This document shows positions 18,571 to 49,356 of a stretch of DNA of 64,000 nt, piece after piece (position 1 is the first letter of the stretch; the number at the start of each line of letters is the position of its first letter). The stretch spans positions 1-64,000 of the IMG/VR virus record IMGVR_UViG_3300042868_007959. The stretch is one strand, 5' to 3'. A program made the translations under genes and the position numbers. A model generated the notes under the pieces. That model searched no databases and had not been told where the DNA came from. It worked only from the letters and a program-made list of their open reading frames with translations.

Positions 18571-20169
18571 TTATTTTATTTTTATTTTCATTTTAGTTCC
18601 TATTTCATTTTTCTCACAAGTAATTTTAAACTTGTGTTCTTCCAAAATTGCAACGCAAATATTTAATCCCAAACCAGTACCTGATTCCTTTTGTCCTTCT
18701 TTTCTTGTATATGGTTTACATAGGTAATCAAAATCTTCTTGTGTTAACCCCCTACCATTATCTTGAATGTAAACAGTATTCTCATCAGAATATATTTTAA
18801 CAAACTTAGTGTCAGAATCATTGTACTTTAAACCATTCCTGATTAAGTTGTCAACTGCAGTACAGAATAACGCTTCGTTTACTTCTATTGTTGGTAAGTC
18901 CTCAATAATTACTTGACTACTATATGCGGTTGATGATAGGTAATCAGATAGTATCACTTTTAAATCGCATTCCGCCTTATTTAAAACAACATCTTTTTTA
19001 ACAAGATTTGTAAACTCATATACCCCTTTATACACTTTTTGTGAATGTTTAAGACCTTCCTTAATCATTCTAATTGGTGCCTCTATTTTTAAATCGGTAA
19101 TGTCTTCGGGTTTTAATCTTCTTTCTAAAGAACTTAATCCTCTTGGCATATATGTATTGATACCTGAGTGCATATCGTGTCTTAATATTTTAGCGGCATG
19201 TTCTAAATAAGTGTTCTTTTTTTCAATCTCTTTCTTTTGTTCGTGAGTAGTGGTGACATCTGTTGCAATTTTCATAACACGATAAATCTTACCATCCATA
19301 CCAATGATTGGATTATAGGTTGCTTGAAGATGTATTAAGGAACCATCCTTTTTAACTCTAGTGATTTCACCAGTAAATAATATACCATCATTTAATTTTT
19401 CCCAAAAAAGAGAATATTCCTCACTTTTTGAGTGGTCCTCATCTATAAAAATCCTATGGTGTTTCCCAACCACTTCATCCAGTGATGAATATCCCATAGT
19501 ATTTAAAAACAATTCATTAGCGAAAATTATATTCCCCTTCAAATCAAACTCAATAACAGCGTTGGATTTATTTATCGCGTTCATTCTATTACGAATTTCC
19601 ACTTCTTTTTTCTTAAGATCTGTAACATCTTGTCTAATTGATGAGAATCCCTCCAACTTACCGTGTTTGTCAAATTTTGCCTTGATGTAGGTATCGACAT
19701 AATATAGTTCACCTGATTTTCCTTTGTTGGTAACAACATCATTCCATATCTCACCTTTCATTACTTTTTCATACATTTTACCCCAATATCCATCAGGTTG
19801 TAATCCTGAGTTTACAATAACATGATCCTTACCTTTAACCTCATCTAAAGACCAACCTGAAACATCCTCAAACTTTTTATTAACGTATGTAATTTTACCG
19901 TATTTATCGGCAACAGAAACGATGGTTGCAGAATCAATAAAATCTTCACTATCTTTTATTTGTTTTAATAAACCATCTTTTAACTCTACGGTTTGGGATT
20001 TCATTAAAAAATAAAATAATGGAGAAAATAATAAAAAGCAAGATATCTCAATAATTTTTGTTATATCAGTGGATCCAATAATCCCCGATAAAACAAAAAT
20101 TTTAGTTAAAAGAAAAGTAACCATCAAGATTACAGAAGGTATTATTAATAATTTACGTTTTTTAATCAT
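18571..20169 (-). CDS. Membrane PAS-PAS sensor histidine kinase
   Basis: Two N-terminal TMs, two PAS/PAC domains, H-box LRHD, N-box NLIRNGLKY, DNGRG, GTGLGL. Confidence 0.93.
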   Translation of the reverse strand: MIKKRKLLIIPSVILMVTFLLTKIFVLSGIIGSTDITKIIEISCFLLFSPLFYFLMKSQTVELKDGLLKQIKDSEDFIDSATIVSVADKYGKITYVNKKFEDVSGWSLDEVKGKDHVIVNSGLQPDGYWGKMYEKVMKGEIWNDVVTNKGKSGELYYVDTYIKAKFDKHGKLEGFSSIRQDVTDLKKKEVEIRNRMNAINKSNAVIEFDLKGNIIFANELFLNTMGYSSLDEVVGKHHRIFIDEDHSKSEEYSLFWEKLNDGILFTGEITRVKKDGSLIHLQATYNPIIGMDGKIYRVMKIATDVTTTHEQKKEIEKKNTYLEHAAKILRHDMHSGINTYMPRGLSSLERRLKPEDITDLKIEAPIRMIKEGLKHSQKVYKGVYEFTNLVKKDVVLNKAECDLKVILSDYLSSTAYSSQVIIEDLPTIEVNEALFCTAVDNLIRNGLKYNDSDTKFVKIYSDENTVYIQDNGRGLTQEDFDYLCKPYTRKEGQKESGTGLGLNICVAILEEHKFKITCEKNEIGTKMKIKIK

Positions 20170-29213: not shown

Positions 29214-29420
29214 TCATATAAATTTTCTATTCGATATATTATGTACCTTCTTAACTTTAGAATAAGATCTAACACCTTGTTTCCTAATCTTTATCATCTT
29301 ATTTTTCATAATCAGATCCTGTTTAATCATCCCATCGTTTTGGAGTTTCATATTCCTTTCATGTAGACTATAATTAACCGAACAAGAAACTAATAGTATA
29401 AGTATTATTATAAATTTCAT
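29214..29420 (-). CDS. Small putative lipoprotein
   Basis: MKFIIILILLVSC lipobox-like signal. Confidence 0.6.
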   Translation of the reverse strand: MKFIIILILLVSCSVNYSLHERNMKLQNDGMIKQDLIMKNKMIKIRKQGVRSYSKVKKVHNISNRKFI

Positions 29421-35667: not shown

Positions 35668-35853
35668 TTATTTTATATTATTTTTTCCGTATTCTTTCCA
35701 TTCTTTTTTGGGGATGATCGTATCATTCATATCTAAACAACTCCATTCACATGTATTGTGATCATAAAAATGAACATGTATTCTATCTACGTGAACTTTT
35801 GGTGAACAAGATGATAGTAACAACAAAACTAATATTTTTTTTATATTACTCAT
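35668..35853 (-). CDS. Small putative lipoprotein
   Basis: ILVLLLLSSC lipobox. Confidence 0.65.
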   Translation of the reverse strand: MSNIKKILVLLLLSSCSPKVHVDRIHVHFYDHNTCEWSCLDMNDTIIPKKEWKEYGKNNIK

Positions 35854-36467: not shown

Positions 36468-36710
36468 TTATTTTATAATAACAGTGCCTTCCATAACACC
36501 CCAACTCGATTTTTCCCTAAAGTAAACCACATTCGTAGTAGTATCTTTGGTACATATCCACATTTGGTTTTCTTTCCATGTTACATTTAAGACAACTTCG
36601 TTTGTTTTAAGTTTTAACTCTTCAGTACCTCCCCATCTTCTCGCTCTAGCATTATCTGTACAAGAGGACAATCCAATTACCCCCATTAGTAAAATTATTA
36701 TTTTTTTCAT
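36468..36710 (-). CDS. Putative lipoprotein
   Basis: MKKIIILLMGVIGLSSC lipobox. Confidence 0.75.
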   Translation of the reverse strand: MKKIIILLMGVIGLSSCTDNARARRWGGTEELKLKTNEVVLNVTWKENQMWICTKDTTTNVVYFREKSSWGVMEGTVIIK

Positions 36711-39255: not shown

Positions 39256-39786
39256 TTATCTTTTACTGATGATATCCTTAAGTTTTTCTAATGAAACTTT
39301 TAATATCTCACCTTGTTCTCTTGGTCTTAATTGACTCATTTGTTTTGCAGTTGATATCGAATACCTACTATCATTTTCGAACCACTGCCCATCTTTAAAA
39401 ACAAAAATAGGGTACCAATTATATGAATATACTACGTATGACCTATTTTCATATTGGGAATGGGTATTACTACCTTTAAATGGTACCTTAGCCATAACTA
39501 AATCTCTACCTGTTTTATTACTAGTAGCAACTCTTTTTTTAGTTATATCAGTTCTCACCAACTCATCGTACTCATCTTTGAAGTAATTGTCTTTAAATAA
39601 CTGATAAAGTTCAAATGCGTCTACACCTGAAAACCCGAAGTTTTTATTAATAAAAGCAATAACCTTACTGTATGGGGTATCTACTCCAAACCCCTCAGAT
39701 TTTAATGTCTTGATAATATATTTTTCTAATTTTTCTTTTCTATTATCAACCTCTTCTTTTAATATTTTTTTGATAGTATTTTTCAT
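39256..39786 (-). CDS. Hypothetical protein with leader MKNTIKKILKE
   Basis: ORF track; TATTTATA at 39790-39798. Confidence 0.8.
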   Translation of the reverse strand: MKNTIKKILKEEVDNRKEKLEKYIIKTLKSEGFGVDTPYSKVIAFINKNFGFSGVDAFELYQLFKDNYFKDEYDELVRTDITKKRVATSNKTGRDLVMAKVPFKGSNTHSQYENRSYVVYSYNWYPIFVFKDGQWFENDSRYSISTAKQMSQLRPREQGEILKVSLEKLKDIISKR

Positions 39787-39823
39787 ATATATAAATATAT
39801 TGTTTTCTTAAAAAAATGGACAT

Positions 39824-39848
39824 AAAAAAATCCATACAATGTATGGAT
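39824..39848 (-). terminator. Intrinsic terminator
   Basis: ATCCATAC-AAT-GTATGGAT plus U-tract. Confidence 0.75.
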
Positions 39849-39870
39849 CTTTATTTAATCTAATAAGATA

Positions 39871-40041
39871 TTAGGATTTTTTAACTTTATCAATGTATGA
39901 CCATATAAAACCTACTGCAGTCATTAATCCACCTGTAATTTCAGTTACTAAAGCTTCGTCAAAATAACCTAACATAACTACTGCACCACCAATTGCGGTT
40001 AGTGAATGTCTAATTAAACCTAAAATTTGTTCTTTACTCAT
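39871..40041 (-). CDS. Small two-TM protein, putative holin (56 aa)
   Basis: Manual translation MSKEQILGLIRHSLTAIGGAVVMLG...GFIWSYIDK; TATTTATA at 40072-40080 and a terminator after it. Confidence 0.65.
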   Translation of the reverse strand: MSKEQILGLIRHSLTAIGGAVVMLGYFDEALVTEITGGLMTAVGFIWSYIDKVKKS

Positions 40042-40125
40042 TTTTTTATTTTTAGTTCTTTATTATTATTATATAAATATAGTAGAATATGTAAAACTAT
40101 ATACCATTTAATAGTTACGTCTGTT

Positions 40126-40365
40126 CTAAAGATCATCAAGACACCATATAGGTGTTTTTTCTCCAACATAAGCATCCATAACATTAAAATGAAAATATTC
40201 TAATGCCTCTTCTTCTGTCATCTCAATGGATAGTATCTCAATACACTTACTAACAGAATAAATTAACCTCATAGAGTGTTGATCAATACCAATTATTGCA
40301 TCGTCAAAACCATCTGCTTTAAGTATCTCATCTTCAGGAAACCATTCTAAAATCTTATCTAACAT
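40126..40365 (-). CDS. Conserved phage hypothetical protein
   Basis: ADGFDDAIIG..AYVGEKTP. Confidence 0.75.
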   Translation of the reverse strand: MLDKILEWFPEDEILKADGFDDAIIGIDQHSMRLIYSVSKCIEILSIEMTEEEALEYFHFNVMDAYVGEKTPIWCLDDL

Positions 40366-40369
40366 AATT

Positions 40370-40504
40370 TTATTTTTTAGAAACTTTTTCTATTTTTTTA
40401 TAATGTGTTTTACCATAGGCATCACAATCAGCCTTTTTAGTAGTTTTACAACTAATTACAATCGTTAAAGTAACGATTAATAAGTAAACTATTTTACGAT
40501 TCAT
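40370..40504 (-). CDS. Small putative lipoprotein (44 aa)
   Basis: Manual translation MNRKIVYLLIVTLTIVISCKTTKKADCDAYG...; overlaps the sigma stop. Confidence 0.6.
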   Translation of the reverse strand: MNRKIVYLLIVTLTIVISCKTTKKADCDAYGKTHYKKIEKVSKK

Positions 40505-41021
40505 ATACTTTGTTTTTTAATTTTTTTATTATATTATTTTTAGCTCTATGGAGATTTGATTTAGATGTACCTTCATGTATATTTAATCTATCCGATATTT
40601 CTTTATGTGTTAAATCCTCATAGTAATACATAAGTATTGCAGTTTTATGTGATGCGGGTAATGTATCTAAAACTAAACTTATATCATTTAATTTTTCTTC
40701 ATTATTATTATCATCTTCTTCAACAGGTGAATCTACATTGTCACAATACTCGATAGGGTACTTTTTTTTCCTTAAAAAATCTATAGACATATTCTTAAAA
40801 ATTCTGTAGATCCAACCATCAAAACTACCTTTACCGTCATACTTATCAATACAACTATAAAGTTTTATGAAACCATTTTGTAGTATGTCTTCCGCATCCA
40901 TATCATTTTTTATATACCTCTTTACTGTAGTATACGCAATTTTCCTATAACATCGATACATTTCTGATTGTGAAATTTTATCACCCCTTAAACAACCTTC
41001 GATTACCTCATTTAAATCCAT
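40494..41021 (-). CDS. ECF RNA polymerase sigma factor, Bacteroidota type
   Basis: DAEDILQNGFIK, SFDGWIYRI..N..IDFLRK (region 2); LP..AILMYYYEDLTHKEIS..EGTSKSNLHRAK (region 4). Confidence 0.92.
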   Translation of the reverse strand: MDLNEVIEGCLRGDKISQSEMYRCYRKIAYTTVKRYIKNDMDAEDILQNGFIKLYSCIDKYDGKGSFDGWIYRIFKNMSIDFLRKKKYPIEYCDNVDSPVEEDDNNNEEKLNDISLVLDTLPASHKTAILMYYYEDLTHKEISDRLNIHEGTSKSNLHRAKNNIIKKLKNKVYES

Positions 41022-41077
41022 ATATAAATAATATTAGAAAACAAAGATAATATAAAATAATTAATAAATGAAAAATT

Positions 41078-43072
41078 TTAATTAATTATTTTTCTAATTG
41101 TCCCGTCATCGTAAATTTCTAACAATAAACCTTTAGTTTGTTGATCAACTTCCTGACCTAATAAATTTATATATTTAACAATTTTTTTATCTTTGATTTG
41201 TTTAGATACACTTATTGGTCCATATATTTTAAATTGCCCATCTATATCATATTGGTTTAATCTATAATAAGTTAACTCATTTAAGTTATAATCAATAAAA
41301 GAATATTTTATTTCTGTGTTACTATTATATGCTGCTTCTTTAATTGAGATGGTTTCCCAAAAAACCCCATCTAAACTCATTTCCAAATCAAAGTAACTAG
41401 AATTATGTTCAGATGCAGTTGCCCACTTTATCACATTATATTGTTGGTATGGGTACCCCTCAAATTCAATTAGTTCTACAGGTAATGATATAGGGTTAGA
41501 TATTCTTATAGTATACTCCTCAATTTCACCATATCCATACCCAGTTGAGTAGTAGGCATCCACGTTTGGAGTTGAATTCCAAACTGAAAGGACTCTCATA
41601 AGGACATCTCCTGTTGTCGCATCTAAGGGGATTGTTATTGATTGTGATGTTGAATTTGCAGTTGGTTTTAACAAAACATTCTCAGATGTCTGAAACGTAC
41701 CGTCACCATTCCAATCAATCCAAGCACCATAACCTTGACCTGGTGGTACTGTATTTGACGCAGTAACAGATAAATTATAAGGTTCACCTTTTGTGACATT
41801 CCCAATAATTGAGGTGAAATCAGAATAAGCATCACCATCATTAGTAGTTGTGTTATTAATGTCACTAATAGTCACATTAGTAATATGATCACCATCAGCA
41901 ATTCCTGATGAATATGGAGGTGCACTTTTTAATGTTATATTTACAATATTTGACACACCAGAAGGGCAAGTACCGTCTTTAGATGTTGTTCTAACATAAA
42001 CGTTTGGTTGTTGTATATTTAATTGGATGTTAAAGGGGTTAGTTGGGGTAACGAATGTATTACTAACCGTACCAAAATTATTGTAAGAGAATTCAATTTT
42101 TGTAATTGTTCCACCATTACCTGTAGTAGTTAAAGAAACGGCATCATTCACTGTTGTTAAAATTTTATCTGAACTTAATGTTCCTCCATTTGTCGGAGTC
42201 GTACAAACTGTTACTGATGTTACTGTTGCCTGAAACCCAGACCTAATACCTAAACCATCTGAAGTAAATCTTAAAGTTAGTTGACCTAAAGAGTTTTCCG
42301 CAGTAATGCTTGTCGGTAATGATGTACCATTTAATGTGGTCAATAAAGTAGAACTTGTATTTGGTCCGTCATAGACATACAGATAATCCCAACCTGACTC
42401 TAGATTAAATGATGAAAAATTTAATTGTAATTTTTTTGTATTATCTGATGGTGTTAAAGTTACTGTTTGGTCTAAACTATTGGCGTAATTATCTGTTGTC
42501 CCACCCCTATCTGTTATGGTATATGTTAATGTGGATGTTAGAGTTTGACTACAATTTGACTCAAAAGGGATAATAGTATTAGAATTACTATTCGAAGACG
42601 TAACACCAAAATCATCTAAATACCATACATTCATTCCTGACGCTCTCGTATCCCTTATTCGAATATAGACATTTACTAAATTTAAAATAGTTAAATCAAT
42701 TGTCCTTTTATTATATGTTGCGGTAGGATTGGCGGAATATGTATTACGAGTTGTCCAGTTTGTATTATCAGTAGATGTTTCCACTACAAAATTGTGTGTC
42801 GCGGAAGTACCACTTCTTCTTATCCAAAAAGTCACTACTGACGGATTTGATATTATGGGTGTCCTTATGAAATCTCCTTGACCATTAAATGATAAATTAT
42901 TATTACCAGTTCTTACTGATGCCGTACTATATCCTATTGATGATTGATCCCAAGTTCCTCCCTGAGTTGGTAATGATCCATTAAAACTTTCATAAATTAA
43001 ATATTGACTACATTGTGTGATACCCAAAAAAGAAATTAGGGTAAATAGTGAGATTAATATTATTCTTTTCAT
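41078..43072 (-). CDS. Secreted surface protein: signal peptide + CUB + GEVED + LPVEL Ig-like + T9SS-CTD-like tail
   Basis: LESGWDYLYVYDGP (CUB); AWIDWNGDGTF..GEIEEY (GEVED); LPVELIEF..YYRLNQYDIDG; NLLGQEV..IYDDGTIRKII. Confidence 0.8.
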   Translation of the reverse strand: MKRIILISLFTLISFLGITQCSQYLIYESFNGSLPTQGGTWDQSSIGYSTASVRTGNNNLSFNGQGDFIRTPIISNPSVVTFWIRRSGTSATHNFVVETSTDNTNWTTRNTYSANPTATYNKRTIDLTILNLVNVYIRIRDTRASGMNVWYLDDFGVTSSNSNSNTIIPFESNCSQTLTSTLTYTITDRGGTTDNYANSLDQTVTLTPSDNTKKLQLNFSSFNLESGWDYLYVYDGPNTSSTLLTTLNGTSLPTSITAENSLGQLTLRFTSDGLGIRSGFQATVTSVTVCTTPTNGGTLSSDKILTTVNDAVSLTTTGNGGTITKIEFSYNNFGTVSNTFVTPTNPFNIQLNIQQPNVYVRTTSKDGTCPSGVSNIVNITLKSAPPYSSGIADGDHITNVTISDINNTTTNDGDAYSDFTSIIGNVTKGEPYNLSVTASNTVPPGQGYGAWIDWNGDGTFQTSENVLLKPTANSTSQSITIPLDATTGDVLMRVLSVWNSTPNVDAYYSTGYGYGEIEEYTIRISNPISLPVELIEFEGYPYQQYNVIKWATASEHNSSYFDLEMSLDGVFWETISIKEAAYNSNTEIKYSFIDYNLNELTYYRLNQYDIDGQFKIYGPISVSKQIKDKKIVKYINLLGQEVDQQTKGLLLEIYDDGTIRKIIN

Positions 43073-43254
43073 AGTATTGTGTATAAAATATCGTTATATA
43101 TTATAAATATAAGGATATGACACTATATCTCAATTGATTCTAAGAAAAAAACTATGTTATTTATCATAGATACACTTTACATGAATATTTTCACATATAT
43201 TATAATTTTTATTTAATAAACTAACTATAATGGGTATTAAGTTATAAATATAAT

Positions 43255-43650
43255 TTAAAAAGTATATTTAGATTTAACTTTTTCTGAAATAGGTATTGGA
43301 TCACCGTTCTCATCAATCCTAACGAATTTTATGTTTGTACTTAAAACCACATTTTGTGTACCAGAATAAACATTGTGGGATCTAGCCTCTAAATGTAAAG
43401 TTAGGGATGTATTACCAACACCTAAAACTTTACCATATATTTTTATTAATTGTCCTTCTTTGGCAGGTTTCTTAAATAAACATTCATCTATTTTAACTGT
43501 AACCATTCTGGGTGTATCAGATACCTCCATCGCATATGCAGCACCCGCAGCGTCTAACCACGCCAATAATTTTCCACCAAATAAATTCCCATGAAACCCT
43601 AAGTCAGACTTCTTTATTGGGTGAGTGGAAATTAAATTAAAATCATTCAT
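43255..43650 (-). CDS. Acyl-CoA thioesterase (HotDog fold)
   Basis: DLGFHGNLFGGKLLAWLD, MVTVKID..FKKP, VGNTSL. Confidence 0.88.
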   Translation of the reverse strand: MNDFNLISTHPIKKSDLGFHGNLFGGKLLAWLDAAGAAYAMEVSDTPRMVTVKIDECLFKKPAKEGQLIKIYGKVLGVGNTSLTLHLEARSHNVYSGTQNVVLSTNIKFVRIDENGDPIPISEKVKSKYTF

Positions 43651-44221
43651 ATATTTCTTTTTTCTTTTTCTTATATTGTTTTCTACCAACAGGAACATAA
43701 GAATCGTTTCCACCTATCATAACTTTTTCCCCATCGAATGTAGGTATCCCATTAATAGTCCTCATGTTCATAATCGCCTTCTCATCATACTTACAAATAG
43801 ATTTTAGTTCTTCTATATCATCGGATAATGTCATAAGATAAATTGACCCCTCAAAGGGTTCACCCTTAAAATCTGATCTTAATCCATATGCAATAACATC
43901 ACAATCTAATTCATCAACAATATCAGTTAATTGCCAAACTTGTTCTTTAGTTAAAAACTGAGACTCATCAACAAAAATACAGTCACAACCAAAACAATTT
44001 TCTGATACAAACTCAAAAAGATTAGTGGATTGATCAAAAGAATACGCATCTCTACTTATACCTACTCTAGAAGTAATTTTATTTTTACCATATCTATCAT
44101 CTAAATTCGATGTAAATAATATGATGTTTCTTTCTCTTTCTTCGTAATTAAACGCAGTTTTTAATAAATCTAATGATTTACCTGCACCCATTGTTGAATA
44201 TCTAAAGTATAACTTTGCCAT
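43643..44221 (-). CDS. tdk: Thymidine kinase
   Basis: YSTMGAGKS, IFVDESQFL, YGLRSDF..PFEGS, IGGNDSY. Confidence 0.95.
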   Translation of the reverse strand: MAKLYFRYSTMGAGKSLDLLKTAFNYEERERNIILFTSNLDDRYGKNKITSRVGISRDAYSFDQSTNLFEFVSENCFGCDCIFVDESQFLTKEQVWQLTDIVDELDCDVIAYGLRSDFKGEPFEGSIYLMTLSDDIEELKSICKYDEKAIMNMRTINGIPTFDGEKVMIGGNDSYVPVGRKQYKKKKKEIYE

Positions 44222-44279
44222 AATTTTTTTTATAATTATAAGTATTTATTATTATAAAATAAAGTATTATTCTACAAAT

Positions 44280-44705
44280 ATGAAATATAAATTAACTAAA
44301 GAAGAGATAGGTAATCTTTTATCAGATTACGAATATATGGGTTACGATGAAGAATCCGCAAAAGATGATTTAGTAGATTTAGTTTCATACTTCAACAATT
44401 TAAAATCTCCTTTAACTTTATATAGAATAATTTGTTCTGATAGTATAGAAGAAATAAACATTACAAAGGTAGGATCACACTATTCATTAGATAAAAAAAA
44501 TCTAACAAATAATCATTATAGAAGAGGTAGTATTGCGGGAGATTGTAGAGGTGAGAAGGTTTTCATATTGACTGTGACTGCGGACAACTCTTTGATAAAT
44601 GTTATGGAGACGTTATCCAATAACATTTTATACCCTCATGAAAAAGAAATAACCCTCAAAAATGAGGGTTATGGTAGTAATGTTATAAAAATAGAAGAAT
44701 TATAA
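44280..44705 (+). CDS. Possible ADP-ribosyltransferase-fold protein
   Basis: LYR, HYS and ExE (HEKE) in R-S-E spacing. Confidence 0.35.
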   Translation: MKYKLTKEEIGNLLSDYEYMGYDEESAKDDLVDLVSYFNNLKSPLTLYRIICSDSIEEINITKVGSHYSLDKKNLTNNHYRRGSIAGDCRGEKVFILTVTADNSLINVMETLSNNILYPHEKEITLKNEGYGSNVIKIEEL

Positions 44706-45809
44706 TAAGTGAGCTTTCGACTCAACCATACCAGAATTAGTTATTTCTACAAAAGTTGCCTTTTCATTAAATTCCGATATAGTCCTACAACCGCTATAAG
44801 ATAATGCGGATTTAACTCCATCATTTAAACCTTCAATAATAAAACTAACTCCTCCTTTGAATGGTATCAATGTTGATTCCCCTTCAATATGTCTCTCTAC
44901 TTGACCGTGACTTGATTTAGTTTCTAAACTAGCGGAACCTCTATATCTTTTATATAATGATCCATTATTTTTTTCGACAATCTTACCAGGAGATTCTTTG
45001 GTGCCTGCCAATAACGAACCTAACATCACACAATTTGCACCAGCAGCTAAAGCTTTAGCAATATCACCACTATTTCTAATTCCACCATCTGCCATCACAG
45101 GTATAGATATATTTGAACCTACTACACAATCATTAATTGATGTTACATTTGGTACCCCATGACCAGTTTTTATTCTTGTTGTACACAGACTACCTCCACC
45201 GATACCGACTCTTAAACCGTCAGCACCCCATTCACAAAGATCCATAGCTGATCTCGTAGTAGATATGTTACCTGCAATGATATCTACATGTGAGGGTAAA
45301 CATTTCCTTAACTCAGAAATCATATTTTTAACATTAAGATGGTGACCGTGCGCAACATCAATAATTAATATATTTGCACCACTCTCAACCAATTTAGTTG
45401 ATCTAATAATATCTGAAGACATTACCCCAATCGCTGCCATAACAGGAATGTCCTTAATTTCTGTGTGCCAATCATCGTACATAACTCCCCACTCTTCATA
45501 TGTTGAATTATCTCTAAAATGTTTTCTAACTTTTTTGACTTCTTCACATTGTTCTTCTACTGTCATAAATCTATGAATACAACCTACACCACCTAGTTCT
45601 GCCATTTTAATTGCCATTTCAGATTCACATACTGTATCCATACAAGATGCGACATAAGGTGTTAATAAACCATATCTTCTACTAACTTTAGTTTCTAATC
45701 TAATATGTGATCTACTACTAATGTCTGAGTACTTAGGAACTAATAATACATCGTCATATGTTAAAGATTTTTCTACTTTTAATTTATTCTGACTTTTCAT
45801 TTTATTCAA
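44700..45809 (-). CDS. guaB: IMP dehydrogenase / GMP reductase family, no CBS subdomain
   Basis: LTYDDVLLVP, IDVAHGH, VGIGGGSLCTTR, MADGGI, MLGSLLAG, YRGSAS; guaB versus guaC not resolved. Confidence 0.85.
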   Translation of the reverse strand: MNKMKSQNKLKVEKSLTYDDVLLVPKYSDISSRSHIRLETKVSRRYGLLTPYVASCMDTVCESEMAIKMAELGGVGCIHRFMTVEEQCEEVKKVRKHFRDNSTYEEWGVMYDDWHTEIKDIPVMAAIGVMSSDIIRSTKLVESGANILIIDVAHGHHLNVKNMISELRKCLPSHVDIIAGNISTTRSAMDLCEWGADGLRVGIGGGSLCTTRIKTGHGVPNVTSINDCVVGSNISIPVMADGGIRNSGDIAKALAAGANCVMLGSLLAGTKESPGKIVEKNNGSLYKRYRGSASLETKSSHGQVERHIEGESTLIPFKGGVSFIIEGLNDGVKSALSYSGCRTISEFNEKATFVEITNSGMVESKAHLL

Positions 45810-47299: not shown

Positions 47300-47383
47300 A
47301 AGTAAGTATAAAAAATTTATTTAATAAAATCAACATATATTTTTTTTATATTGTTTTTTTTATTAACTTCGAATAAAAAATTT

Positions 47384-47911
47384 ATGAATATTTTTGTTTT
47401 AGATTACGACACAAAAAAATGTGCACAAATGCATTGTGATAAACATGTTGTTAAAATGATTTTAGAGACTGCACAGTTACTCTGCGGTGTACACCATATG
47501 ACAAACAGTGTAAGTGACATAGAAGTACCATATAAGTTATCTCATAGGAATCACCCATGTTCTATTTGGGTAAGGGGTTGTGTTGAGAATTATGTATGGT
47601 TATGTGATTTAGGTATCGAACTATGTAAAGAATATACATATAGATATGGTAAGCGACATAAATCACAGGATGTGATCGAGTGGTGTATGTTAAATATACC
47701 TAATATTAAAGAGATTGGTGATATCACACCTTTTCCATTGGCAATGAATGACGAATGTAAAATAAATGGTGAGGTAGTAGAATCTTACAGAAAATACTAT
47801 ATTATGTATAAGAAAGATTTTGCTAAATGGACTGGTAGAGAAATTCCTTTATGGTTTAATCCTTCAAATGATTCATCAGTACCCCACCAAGTGAAGATAC
47901 TTGTCTCATAA
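47384..47911 (+). CDS. Pyrimidine-dimer DNA glycosylase (DenV/PDG superfamily)
   Basis: MNIFVLD..HCDKHVVKMILETAQLL, HRNHPCSIW, EYTYRYGKRHKS. Confidence 0.8.
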   Translation: MNIFVLDYDTKKCAQMHCDKHVVKMILETAQLLCGVHHMTNSVSDIEVPYKLSHRNHPCSIWVRGCVENYVWLCDLGIELCKEYTYRYGKRHKSQDVIEWCMLNIPNIKEIGDITPFPLAMNDECKINGEVVESYRKYYIMYKKDFAKWTGREIPLWFNPSNDSSVPHQVKILVS

Positions 47912-48461
47912 TCTCATTTATTGCGGCATCCCCTAAAGAAACTTTTCTTTTAGTATAGTCAATACCTAAGACACCGATAAATCTATCATCAATACTTTTT
48001 ATTGCGAATAAATAACCTGATTTGCAACTATTTTCTTCTGCAATATATTTTAAACCGTATGTGGGAATAGTATCATCCTTAAAATCAGGTATTTTAATCA
48101 CATCATTATTAACCAATTCATTCAGTGATTTTGAAAATAGGTTAACAGGTATATTCTGTAAACTATGTTGTATGGATGAAGCCCCAATACCAACTGTTTC
48201 ATAGATAATTGAGAATTTTGCGATAGATTTACCTGTTGGGTAAAAATGACCACCATTATGGAATTGTGTCACCCATATCCTATCGGCATTATTATCTCCC
48301 TTTATCTCATCAATTTTATGTGTAACTAATTCACTTACTTGAAGTACCTCTGCAACCATATCAGGTTTTTTAGTTTTTCTTTTCTCAACCCAATTTTTGA
48401 CTAAAAATATTGTAACTGGACTTATGACACCAGTGATAAATGCAATCGCTATCTCAACCAT
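47856..48461 (-). CDS. N-terminal TM + GAF-like domain protein (architecture like T4 holin T)
   Basis: Hydrophobic N-terminus; RIWVTQFHNG..FIGVLGIDY GAF-like pattern; TATTTATA at 48476-48484. Confidence 0.5.
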   Translation of the reverse strand: MVEIAIAFITGVISPVTIFLVKNWVEKRKTKKPDMVAEVLQVSELVTHKIDEIKGDNNADRIWVTQFHNGGHFYPTGKSIAKFSIIYETVGIGASSIQHSLQNIPVNLFSKSLNELVNNDVIKIPDFKDDTIPTYGLKYIAEENSCKSGYLFAIKSIDDRFIGVLGIDYTKRKVSLGDAAINEIMRQVSSLGGVLMNHLKD

Positions 48462-48561: not shown

Positions 48562-49356
48562 TTACAACAAACTCTCAGAAAGACTCCACAACATTTTGTT
48601 TACATCTAAATTTTGTTCGATTGATCTAATTGATCGACTTCTAGATCTTCTAACTTTACCGTTGTCTCTTGGTGTAACAATCAATGTACCACCCTGTAAC
48701 ATATTTTCCTGTACTCTATTGAATACACTCCACAAATCGTTACCAGAATCTTCATCTCTTCTGATGTGTAACATCTGATTCAAATCAATTAATTTATCAG
48801 AACCCCATCTTTCATCTGCAACCATTTTGGCGAAATCATATTGTTGAGTCATCGTTAAATCTTTGGACATCATATCCTGAACTCTACCAACAACCAATGG
48901 GATTTTCTCTGTTGTCATATTAATAACTTTAAGAATATCCTCTTTTTGAAACCCTTTGTGCATCACTCGGAACTCATCAAAAGTTTTATCTGCGATAACC
49001 AAACCATTAGAACAAACTAATCTGAATAGTCCCACATGAAACTTAAATGAAGATGAACCATCGTGTGAATTGGTTAATAAAATTTCTGGATGGGTATCAC
49101 CAATCTCTCTAGATAAATTAATGTTGTTTTCATTACGAAAACGTAACATATGTTTTTTAAATGGGCTTTTAGCTTCGTACCCCTTTCTAGTTGATGATTG
49201 CATCGCCTTTGTAGGTAACCAACCTTGTTCACTTAAAATTTCGATCACTTCCGTAGTTGGGATGAATCGATAAACATTCGACAAATGGTTTGATGGGGCT
49301 TGTGTAAGAGCCGATGGACAAACTGAACCAATTTGATTTAAATTTAAATATTCCAT
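48562..49356 (-). CDS. DUF932/DUF945 family protein
   Basis: YRFIPT, KHMLRFR, LTNSHDGSSSF..GLFRLVCSNGL, LWSVFNRVQEN. Confidence 0.88.
   Translation of the reverse strand: MEYLNLNQIGSVCPSALTQAPSNHLSNVYRFIPTTEVIEILSEQGWLPTKAMQSSTRKGYEAKSPFKKHMLRFRNENNINLSREIGDTHPEILLTNSHDGSSSFKFHVGLFRLVCSNGLVIADKTFDEFRVMHKGFQKEDILKVINMTTEKIPLVVGRVQDMMSKDLTMTQQYDFAKMVADERWGSDKLIDLNQMLHIRRDEDSGNDLWSVFNRVQENMLQGGTLIVTPRDNGKVRRSRSRSIRSIEQNLDVNKMLWSLSESLL

What the first reader, a model, noticed from the sequence alone, without database searches (positions are those of the whole stretch)
40370..43072. Phage gene for a CUB-GEVED surface protein with a T9SS-like tail, followed by an ECF sigma and a lipoprotein
Seen: signal peptide, CUB, GEVED, LPVEL Ig-like domain and a shortened CTD-like end; both this gene and the sigma gene have TATTTAT upstream; no anti-sigma is adjacent. 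Established: this architecture is typical of Bacteroidota type IX secretion cargo. Inference: the phage uses the host T9SS to decorate infected cells (adhesion, receptor masking or grazer avoidance), and an unopposed ECF sigma may redirect envelope genes.
Basis: partly seen in the sequence, partly recalled or inferred. Interest (0 to 1): 0.68.

Follow-up and report, generated by a model that had tools for sequence, protein, structure and literature searches.

The report
Phage-borne exported T9SS-type binding protein
A large freshwater phage carries a swappable gene for an exported, sticky-looking surface protein built like cargo of its Bacteroidota host's type IX secretion system, next to an ECF sigma factor gene that lacks its usual anti-sigma partner. 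Phage-encoded cargo of this kind has been reported once before, so this is a new variant of a known thing, not a new kind.

Summary
ORF 41078-43072(-) encodes a 664-aa all-beta protein with these parts:
- a Sec signal peptide
- a weak galactose-binding-like domain
- CUB
- an Ig-like domain
- GEVED
- an FN3-fold 'LPVEL' domain
- a 39-aa beta tail

An ECF sigma gene (40494-41021) and a 44-aa lipoprotein ORF (40370-40504) follow it.

The contig is a 254-kb T4-like jumbo phage from lake water and is not a chimera. The protein belongs to a family of more than 265 members found on phage contigs.

The tail fails every T9SS CTD model. About 12% of family members carry a canonical type A CTD at the same position; one of these passes TIGR04183. 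In Bacteroidota genomes the LPVEL domain almost always precedes such a CTD. Rare bacterial proteins in SprA-encoding genomes have the same short tail.

T9SS export is therefore plausible but unproven.

The gene is a moron-like cassette with its own phage promoter motif, ATATTTAT, which occurs upstream of 59 ORFs. In relatives it usually lies just downstream of the major capsid gene. Only a sub-lineage pairs it with the sigma, in a hypervariable island.

In 15 of 15 bacterial loci examined (14 of them Crocinitomicaceae), the sigma's homologue is followed by a ~285-450-aa membrane protein that is probably its anti-sigma. The phage lacks this partner.

Phage-encoded T9SS cargo has precedent (Cryophage, 2020).

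The parts
41078..43072 (-). Cargo gene, 664 aa. Domain order: Sec signal peptide (1-19, cleavage predicted before invariant Q20); weak galactose-binding-like jelly roll (about 25-160); CUB (about 175-287); Ig-like beta domain (about 295-382); GEVED (about 390-525); FN3-fold 'LPVEL' domain (527-625); 39-aa three-strand tail (626-664).
41078..41491 (-). C-terminal module of 138 aa (FN3 'LPVEL' domain plus short tail). It is shared as a unit, at 49-92% identity, by phage proteins with different passenger domains.
43103..43110 (-). ATATTTAT, a phage promoter-like motif 30 nt upstream of the cargo ATG.
   Evidence: The same 8-mer lies upstream of 59 of 301 ORFs in sense orientation. Seven of the nine cargo-gene upstream regions compared (this window and eight related loci) carry ATATTTAT or TATTTAT.
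40494..41021 (-). ECF-type sigma factor, 175 aa, with regions 2 and 4 only.
   Evidence: phrog_1740.
41042..41049 (-). TATCTTTG, which matches the Bacteroidota housekeeping-sigma -7 consensus TAnnTTTG (consensus from own knowledge). It lies 20 nt upstream of the sigma ATG.
   Evidence: The equivalent TATATTTG is present upstream of the sigma gene in L093 and L095.
40370..40504 (-). 44-aa lipoprotein ORF with a signal peptide, a VISC lipobox and a basic 26-aa mature peptide. Its ATG overlaps the sigma stop.
   Evidence: Conserved in L093 and L095 at the same level as the flanking genes. No family hit.
40126..40365 (-). 79-aa acidic cytoplasmic protein (phrog_13182, function unknown), conserved downstream of the island.
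39871..40041 (-). Holin of the Pam3 gp28 family.
   Evidence: 56.6 bits.
43255..44221 (-). Conserved upstream flank of the island: 4HBT thioesterase and thymidine kinase.

Best explanation
The 664-aa ORF is a phage accessory ('moron'-type) gene. It encodes an exported, non-enzymatic, multi-domain binding protein.

Proposed route and role:
- A Bacteroidota-style Sec signal, with cleavage leaving an N-terminal Gln, takes the protein into the periplasm.
- Its C-terminal module (LPVEL FN3 domain plus 39-aa beta tail) is a shortened counterpart of the 'LPVEL domain plus type A CTD' ending of Bacteroidota T9SS cargo.
- That module most likely hands the protein to the host T9SS. The lectin-like, CUB and GEVED domains then end up on the infected cell's surface or in the medium.

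Genomic setting:
- The gene is transcribed from the phage's own ATATTTAT promoter class.
- In this sub-lineage it sits in a hypervariable island together with an ECF sigma. That sigma derives from a sigma/anti-sigma pair that is near-universal in Crocinitomicaceae, but only the sigma half is present in the phage.

Shown: phage origin, domain content, signal peptide, family distribution, island structure and absence of the anti-sigma partner.

Inferred: T9SS dependence of the short tail, surface display, ligand binding and any regulon of the sigma.
For: Phage and not a chimera:
- IMG/VR virus record of 254 kb.
- gp23-type capsid protein, prohead protease, baseplate wedge, sheath-like protein and a gp55-like late sigma.
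- An independent lake assembly spans holin, sigma, cargo and TK on one 8.6-kb contig.
- The same synteny occurs in L093, L095, L151, L167, L187 and L191.

Exported:
- The conserved signal peptide ends in ..(S/T)Q in all passenger variants printed, and a loose signal-plus-Q pattern matches 160 of 189 relatives.

Link to T9SS:
- 14 of 116 full-length family members carry an FPNP-type CTD in place of the tail.
- P0120 scores 36.6 bits on TIGR04183, above the cut-off of 23.
- P0011 is 82% identical to our protein over the aligned 94% of its length, yet ends in the canonical CTD. The two endings are therefore exchanged on one passenger.
- In 80 bacterial loci the LPVEL domain is nearly always followed by an ~85-aa CTD.
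- Short-tail versions exist in four bacterial genomes, all of which encode SprA.
- Related phages carry neighbouring signal-peptide proteins with PKD and CHU_C domains.
- Atlas neighbours of the module are viral clusters and Bacteroidota Por_Secre_tail clusters.

Moron and island behaviour:
- Own promoter motif.
- Variable positions.
- Flanks are 94-99% identical in DNA while the cargo is replaced and the sigma is 44% identical in L095.

Orphan sigma.
Against: - The tail itself gives no hit to any CTD model.
- Its profile alignment to canonical CTDs is not significant.
- Published work, as far as I recall it, found that roughly 70-100 residues are needed for type A CTD function in Flavobacterium; here only 39 residues follow the FN3 domain.
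- The host is not identified.
- The family's commonest position, directly after the major capsid gene, and its sharing of a promoter motif with structural genes fit a virion-related role equally well.
- No expression or localisation data exist; no RNA runs were found.
Confidence: 0.55

Rival explanations
1. The protein is Sec-exported but not a T9SS substrate. The short tail would be a decayed CTD or a different anchoring or oligomerisation element, and the protein would act in the periplasm or on the inner face of the outer membrane, for example in superinfection exclusion, as other phage envelope proteins do.
For: - No CTD model matches.
- hhalign is not significant.
- Bacterial short-tail proteins also fail TIGR04183.
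- Short-tail forms are a small minority next to canonical CTD forms within bacterial genomes: 1-4 against 8-38 LPVEL proteins per genome.
Against: - The tail is under clear constraint. K102, N109, G112, Q113, G121, D129 and G130 of the module are invariant across 24 divergent proteins.
- It substitutes for a canonical CTD on near-identical passengers.
- One bacterial short-tail protein has an N-terminus resembling that of the extracellular nuclease ExeM.
Confidence: 0.25
2. The protein is virion-associated: a Hoc-like head decoration or adhesin. The conserved C-terminal module would dock on the capsid and the variable passengers would be displayed.
For: - 25 of 45 IMG/VR loci place the gene within 4 kb of the gp23 gene, often 150-200 nt downstream of it.
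- A constant C-terminal module with variable passengers is the pattern expected of a docking domain.
- The ATATTTAT motif is shared with structural genes.
- T9SS-sorting-domain ORFs near head modules were also noted in gut phages (PMC6949934).
Against: - A conserved cleavable Sec signal in every variant would remove the protein from the cytoplasm, where heads assemble.
- The same module occurs in dozens of chromosomal bacterial proteins per genome.
- Some family members end in a bona fide T9SS CTD.
- There is no PHROG structural hit.
- In this phage the gene lies far from the head genes.
Confidence: 0.13
3. The block is a host fragment mis-joined to phage DNA, or a recent one-off capture with no role in the phage.
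For: The domains are typical of Crocinitomicaceae surface proteins, and the sigma is about 40% identical to host sigmas.
Against: - GC content is uniform, 27-33%.
- The same linkage appears in independent assemblies and samples.
- More than 265 homologues on phage contigs share 53-93% identity, whereas no full-length cellular homologue was found in 151 Crocinitomicaceae genomes; only single domains match, at 28-47%.
- A phage promoter motif lies upstream.
Confidence: 0.02

Closest known systems
Phage-encoded T9SS cargo of 'Cryophage' (Bellas et al. 2020, PMC7468147)
   Same: A Bacteroidota phage carries genes for proteins with T9SS sorting domains. These genes are among the phage's flexible, hypervariable genes, and the authors proposed host-T9SS hijacking and superinfection exclusion.
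   Different: Cryophage is a 76-kb phage with enzymatic or PA14 passengers and canonical type A domains. Here the phage is a ~254-kb T4-like phage, the passengers are non-enzymatic CUB/GEVED domains, the ending is a shortened one that no CTD model recognises, and an ECF sigma is paired with the gene.
Bacteroidota T9SS type A cargo with an LPVEL FN3 domain followed by a CTD (Crocinitomicaceae, Saprospiraceae and others)
   Same: Signal peptide, beta-rich binding domains (CUB, GEVED), and an LPVEL FN3 domain as the penultimate domain.
   Different: Bacterial proteins nearly always end in an ~85-aa CTD (module about 183 aa), whereas ours ends in 39 aa (module 138 aa). No full-length cellular homologue was found in the genomes searched.
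T9SS sorting-domain and BACON-repeat ORFs next to head genes in crAss-like and gut phages (de Jonge et al. 2019, PMC6949934)
   Same: ORFs with T9SS sorting domains placed beside the head module of Bacteroidota phages.
   Different: Different phage groups and domains; the function is likewise unknown.
T4 Hoc and other Ig-like capsid decoration proteins
   Same: Arrays of Ig-like or lectin-like domains with a conserved C-terminal module. In relatives the gene is adjacent to the capsid gene.
   Different: Hoc has no signal peptide. There is no sequence or profile similarity, and the module is abundant in cellular secreted proteins.
ECF sigma / membrane anti-sigma pairs of Flavobacteriales (for example L096 and the Crocinitomicaceae loci L137-L150)
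   Same: 36-42% identity over the whole sigma, with the same region 2 plus region 4 build.
   Different: The cellular gene is followed, with an overlapping start, by a ~285-450-aa single-pass membrane protein; two of the 11 scanned have a CHU_C domain. The phage gene is followed instead by a 44-aa lipoprotein ORF.

Membership tests
T9SS type A C-terminal sorting domain (TIGR04183 / PF18962) | Profile match above the curated cut-off at the extreme C-terminus | tested here: not met
   No hit for the whole protein or for C-terminal pieces, even at E=10. A six-frame scan of the phage genome finds none. Family member P0120 does pass (36.6 bits against 23); P0067 and P0011 score 18-19 bits.
T9SS type A C-terminal sorting domain (TIGR04183 / PF18962) | N-terminal Sec signal peptide on the same protein | tested here: met
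   MKR, hydrophobic core, then ..T|QC, with Q20 and C21 invariant. All passenger variants printed end the signal in ..(S/T/A)Q. Heuristic only; no SignalP run was possible.
T9SS type A C-terminal sorting domain (TIGR04183 / PF18962) | Host organism possesses a T9SS | tested here: inconclusive
   The host is not identified. The four bacterial genomes that carry the same short-tail module all encode SprA at more than 2300 bits in total.
T9SS type A C-terminal sorting domain (TIGR04183 / PF18962) | Export that depends on T9SS components, with CTD removal by PorU | not testable with these tools
   Needs genetics and biochemistry.
T9SS type B sorting domain (TIGR04131 / PF13585 CHU_C) | Profile match at the C-terminus | tested here: not met
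CUB domain (PF00431) | Profile match above the gathering score | tested here: met
   34 bits against 21.4, residues 196-283.
GEVED domain (PF20009) | Profile match above the gathering score | tested here: met
   58.4 bits against 24.4, residues 448-522. It is the only copy in the phage.
ECF (group 4) sigma-70 factors | Regions 2 and 4 only, about 170-200 aa, with a profile match | tested here: met
   TIGR02937 at 115.7 bits against 42.9; Sigma70_r2 and Sigma70_r4_2 both match.
ECF (group 4) sigma-70 factors | Co-transcribed cognate anti-sigma factor | tested here: not met
   The downstream ORFs are a 44-aa lipoprotein, a 79-aa acidic protein and a holin. In 15 of 15 bacterial loci examined, the homologous sigma gene is followed by a conserved single-pass membrane protein.
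Phage moron / flexible accessory gene | Autonomous transcription unit at variable positions between conserved genes, with alleles far more divergent than the flanks | tested here: met
   Own ATATTTAT motif, and in L094 and L011 a terminator hairpin ahead of it. At least four contexts. Flank identity is 94-99% against a replaced cargo.
Capsid decoration protein (Hoc-like) | Cytoplasmic protein (no signal peptide) present on virions | tested here: not met
   A signal peptide is present. Virion presence is not testable here. The gene is adjacent to the capsid gene in relatives.

The most novel reading that the evidence does not exclude
The LPVEL FN3 domain plus 39-aa tail is a previously unrecognised minimal T9SS sorting module. 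A whole clade of freshwater jumbo phages uses it to export interchangeable binding domains. In one sub-lineage the module is coupled to a fast-evolving ECF sigma, stripped of its anti-sigma, that switches on a host envelope regulon.
Probability: 0.25. Interest if true: 0.72.

Novelty: new variant of a known kind. Interest (0 to 1): 0.5.

Why it matters
If the short module works as a T9SS signal, three things follow:
- It would define a much smaller sorting tag than current models recognise, so genome annotation is missing a class of cargo.
- It would show that abundant lake phages routinely remodel the surface of infected Flavobacteriia, using a diversifying set of binding proteins.
- It would offer a compact tag for secretion engineering.

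The orphan ECF sigma is a simple test case for phage capture of half a signalling pair.

If the protein instead proves virion-bound, it would be a case of a secretion-type module reused for capsid display.

Tried and rejected
- megablast of 20 kb of the window against GenBank phages gave no match.
- tblastn of the cargo against the same collection found only C-terminal module matches in four uncultured huge phages.
- NCBIfam scans of three C-terminal pieces at E=10 found nothing.
- hhalign of the tail against canonical CTDs gave 3% probability. The module-level alignment extends into the CTD only with a 25-aa gap and low confidence. Homology of the tail to the CTD is therefore not claimed.
- Foldseek against the PDB gave only generic FN3/Ig matches with E>1e-3. 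No solved T9SS CTD appeared among the 50 VIA rows shown.
- The full-length AF2 model is too weak (pLDDT 66) for a fold search.
- I first took the near-identity of the 44-aa lipoprotein between phages as a sign of special constraint. I rejected this: the flanking genes are equally conserved.
- I considered that the lipoprotein, orf79 and holin form a spanin set. I rejected this because orf79 has no membrane segment and the mature lipoprotein is only 26 aa.
- I considered that the ECF sigma reads ATATTTAT. This is unsupported. Cargo genes in the other genomic contexts, with no sigma gene nearby, carry the same motif, and the phage also has a gp55-like and an RpoS-like sigma.
- Complex prediction and the large representative search were not used. 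No binding claim is made, and the word search already gave hundreds of relatives.
Full report
**What is there**

On the minus strand, ORF 41078-43072 encodes 664 aa.
- Pfam finds CUB at residues 196-283 (E 4e-8) and GEVED at 448-522 (E 1e-15). Both are above their gathering scores.
- A sub-threshold galactose-binding-like hit covers residues 79-145.
- The N-terminus is a Sec-type signal: MKR, a hydrophobic core, then ..GIT followed by Q20-C21. Q20 and C21 are invariant in an 18-member alignment.
- From my own knowledge, a Gln at +1 after signal peptidase I cleavage is the 'Q-rule' typical of Bacteroidota.
- All other passenger variants that share the C-terminal module also begin with such a signal ending in ..SQ..AQ or similar.
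- LPVEL is at residues 530-534.

Models:
- An AF2 model of the last 138 aa, built on 24 sequences, has pLDDT 92. It shows seven strands followed by three tail strands.
- Residues 2-100 of the module match fibronectin type III domains at Z about 10. Foldseek gives only generic matches.
- The full-length model is all-beta apart from the signal helix and has modest confidence, pLDDT 66. No catalytic domain was detected.

Downstream genes:
- A 175-aa ECF sigma at 40494-41021: TIGR02937 at 115.7 bits, regions 2 and 4 only.
- A 44-aa ORF at 40370-40504. Its ATG overlaps the sigma stop, and it encodes a signal peptide with a VISC lipobox plus a basic 26-aa mature peptide. It has no family hit.
- A 79-aa acidic protein (phrog_13182).
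- A Pam3-gp28-type holin.

**Is it phage, and is the block real?**

The window is the first 64 kb of a single 253,879-bp IMG/VR virus record. The record is 29% GC and about 91% coding, and CheckV estimates 78% completeness.

It encodes several phage hallmark genes:
- a gp23-type capsid protein and a prohead protease (by 60% and 52% identity to genes annotated Gp23 and Peptidase_S77);
- a baseplate wedge protein, ribonucleotide reductase and a DnaB-type helicase;
- a weak sheath match;
- a gp55-like late sigma.

GC content is even across the window.

Evidence from sequencing runs:
- The stretch 39500-44500 is held, in part or whole, by 24 lake or freshwater metagenome runs from 24 studies.
- In an independent run, one 8,585-nt contig covers 39500-44500 at about 94% identity.
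- In that contig only 42557-42982, which encodes part of the N-terminal domain, is replaced by 418 different letters.

The same gene order (IMPDH, TK, 4HBT, cargo, sigma, 44-aa ORF, orf79, holin) recurs in L093, L095, L151, L167, L187 and L191. The chimera or host-fragment alternative is therefore rejected.

**The family**

The word search returned 265 relatives. The best 120 are 53-93% identical over the full length and lie on contigs of up to 283 kb. Their neighbourhoods, where looked up, are phage-like: Gp23, T4-type portal, prohead protease, T4 RNA ligase, GP88 and HSP70.

In 151 genomes of the family of G001, a Crocinitomicaceae MAG by its record title, only single domains match, at 28-47% identity. 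No full-length counterpart was found in the genomes searched. This architecture therefore appears to be phage-specific.

**The C-terminus**

The family has two endings.
- Most members, like ours, end with the LPVEL domain and a ~39-aa tail with the consensus KKIVKYINLLGQEV..TKG..E(I/V)Y(E/D)DGT..KIIR.
- 14 of 116 members end with the LPVEL domain and an FPNP-type domain about 50 aa longer.
- Of the longer ones, P0120 passes TIGR04183 (36.6 bits, cut-off 23, full model length). P0067 and P0011 score 18-19 bits.
- P0011 is 82% identical to our protein over the aligned 94% of its length, which is closer than most short-tail members. The two endings have therefore been exchanged on one passenger.

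The 138-aa short module also closes phage proteins with quite different passengers. These include CUB only, GBD_T9SS_assoc plus GEVED plus fn3, MAM, and some with no known domain. Module identity in these proteins is 49-92%.

In bacteria, 580 stretches in species-representative genomes encode LPVEL-domain relatives, and the best 80 were kept.
- By record title nearly all are Bacteroidota, with Crocinitomicaceae, Brumimicrobium, Fluviicola, Lishizhenia and Saprospiraceae at the top.
- In nearly all of them the domain is followed by a canonical ~85-aa CTD.
- Four loci, L014, L016, L017 and L021, end in a short tail like ours. Their GC content is 36-45%, and they share no other gene with the phage.
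- Within those four genomes, 8-38 proteins carry the LPVEL domain and one to four of them carry the short tail.
- All four genomes encode SprA.

The tail itself matches no CTD model, and its profile alignment to canonical CTDs is not significant.

My reading is that the short module is a conserved and therefore functional relative of the T9SS-cargo ending. Its use as a T9SS signal is an inference from substitution and context, not a demonstrated membership.

**Position and transcription**

Across 45 IMG/VR loci with family members:
- 25 lie within 4 kb of the capsid gene, often 150-200 nt after it;
- several cut contigs share the same downstream genes;
- four lie next to the ECF sigma;
- one lies by an RNA ligase gene.

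One long-form relative lies beside HSP70. It is followed by three more signal-peptide proteins, one with PKD_6 and one with CHU_C.

- It is the most enriched 7-mer in the 60 nt upstream of ORFs: 66 of 301 ORFs against 8.2 expected.
- ATATTTAT occurs upstream of 59 ORFs in sense and 17 in antisense orientation, out of 121 copies in the whole genome.
- The genes carrying it include structural and replication genes, and the motif often follows a terminator hairpin.
- The cargo gene carries it 30 nt before the ATG.
- Seven of the nine cargo-gene upstream regions compared (this window and eight related loci) carry ATATTTAT or TATTTAT.

The sigma gene has only the 7-mer, 2 nt from its ATG. It does have TATCTTTG 20 nt upstream, and L093 and L095 have TATATTTG at the same place. 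These fit the Bacteroidota housekeeping -7 consensus TAnnTTTG, which I cite from my own knowledge.

The motif therefore marks a general phage promoter class and is not a link between the two genes. Which of the phage's three sigmas, or the host sigma, reads it is unknown.

**The island and the sigma**

Comparison with L093 and L095:
- The flanking genes are 94-99% identical in DNA.
- In L093 the cargo is 81% and the sigma about 90% identical in protein.
- In L095 the cargo slot holds a 361-aa protein with a different passenger but the same signal type and short module. The sigma there is only 44% identical.

L187 and L191 show a third haplotype, with a sigma about 50% identical to ours. Cargo plus sigma is thus a hypervariable island, like the flexible T9SS-cargo genes reported for Cryophage (PMC7468147).

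The 44-aa lipoprotein is no more conserved than the flanks.

Sigma homologues of 36-42% identity occur in 60 of 61 Crocinitomicaceae genomes.
- In all 15 bacterial loci examined, the gene is followed by a ~285-450-aa protein (13 of them 405-450 aa).
- In the 13 longer partners the N-terminus carries a conserved ..PY(N/D)..AW..L..RLD motif and one membrane helix; the two shorter ones (L143, L145) also have one helix but a looser N-terminal motif.
- The start overlaps the sigma gene in L096.
- Two of the 11 partners scanned carry CHU_C and four have PKD matches, three of them below the cut-off.
- This is the classical anti-sigma position.
- The phage has nothing like it, so an unopposed sigma is a fair inference. 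Its targets remain unknown.

**Comparison with what is known, and verdict**

Phage-encoded T9SS cargo has been described for Cryophage, a 76-kb phage with canonical type A domains on variable enzyme or PA14 genes (PMC7468147). T9SS-sorting-domain ORFs have also been noted near head genes of gut phages (PMC6949934).

This case adds the following:
- a large family in T4-like lake jumbo phages;
- a non-enzymatic CUB-GEVED passenger;
- a shortened ending that no CTD model recognises but that is interchangeable with the canonical one;
- in one sub-lineage, a linked orphan ECF sigma.

I rate it a new variant of a known kind, of moderate interest.

The main open alternative is a virion-associated role, suggested by the capsid-gene adjacency. 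The conserved Sec signal argues against that reading.

Noticed in passing
whole G000 contig; e.g. window 43103-43110, 39790-39797 region, 47856-48461 upstream: ATATTTAT is a strand-specific promoter-like motif upstream of 59 of 301 ORFs. It usually lies 2-35 nt before the start codon and often follows a hairpin plus T-run. A second enriched class, ATATTTG (20 ORFs against 4.4 expected), resembles the Bacteroidota TAnnTTTG -7 element.
   Followed up: partly
G000:C1 125314-126111(-) and 241722-242456(+), outside the window: The phage encodes two further sigma factors: a 265-aa RpoS/RpoD-like sigma (phrog_351) and a 244-aa gp55-like late sigma (phrog_234). With the ECF sigma this makes three.
   Followed up: partly
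L096:4557-5858 and L137-L150 (bacterial loci): Homologues of the ECF sigma in 14 Crocinitomicaceae loci and one Flavobacteriales locus (L096) are always followed by a ~285-450-aa single-pass membrane protein. Thirteen of the 15 share a conserved N-terminal motif (..PYN..AW..L..RLD). Two of the 11 scanned end in a CHU_C (T9SS type B) domain. These look like putative anti-sigma factors with a secretion-type C-terminus.
   Followed up: partly
window 18571-20169 (-): A 532-aa phage protein with PAS domains and a HATPase_c domain, resembling a sensor histidine kinase. It is 64% identical over 322 aa to a GAF-PAS-HATPase gene in the related contig L010.
   Followed up: partly
window 42557-42982: In an independent lake assembly (run X4), this part of the cargo gene, which encodes part of the N-terminal domain, is replaced by 418 unrelated or diverged letters. 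The rest of the 5-kb stretch is about 94% identical.
   Followed up: no
window 43255-45809 (-): A run of nucleotide and metabolic accessory genes: 4HBT thioesterase, thymidine kinase and an IMPDH/GMP-reductase-like protein. A pyrimidine-dimer glycosylase-like gene lies at 47351-47911 and a DUF932 gene at 48562-49356.
   Followed up: no
L001:10141-12797: In a related phage with the long-form cargo, three further genes for signal-peptide proteins follow it. One has PKD_6 and one has CHU_C, so together they form a small cluster of T9SS-type secreted proteins.
   Followed up: partly
L011:2480-2665 and L001:5770-7635: Related phage contigs encode ribosomal protein S21 and an HSP70-family chaperone.
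   Followed up: no
L094:7992-8471 and L011:10568-11047: Where the cargo gene follows the capsid gene, it is itself followed, with an overlapping start, by a conserved 159-aa hydrophobic protein that looks multi-pass. It has no family hit.
   Followed up: no
window 36468-36710 (-), 35668-35853 (-), 29214-29420 (-): Several further small ORFs with lipoprotein-like signals (..SSC, ..VSC) are scattered among the small genes of this part of the phage.
   Followed up: no
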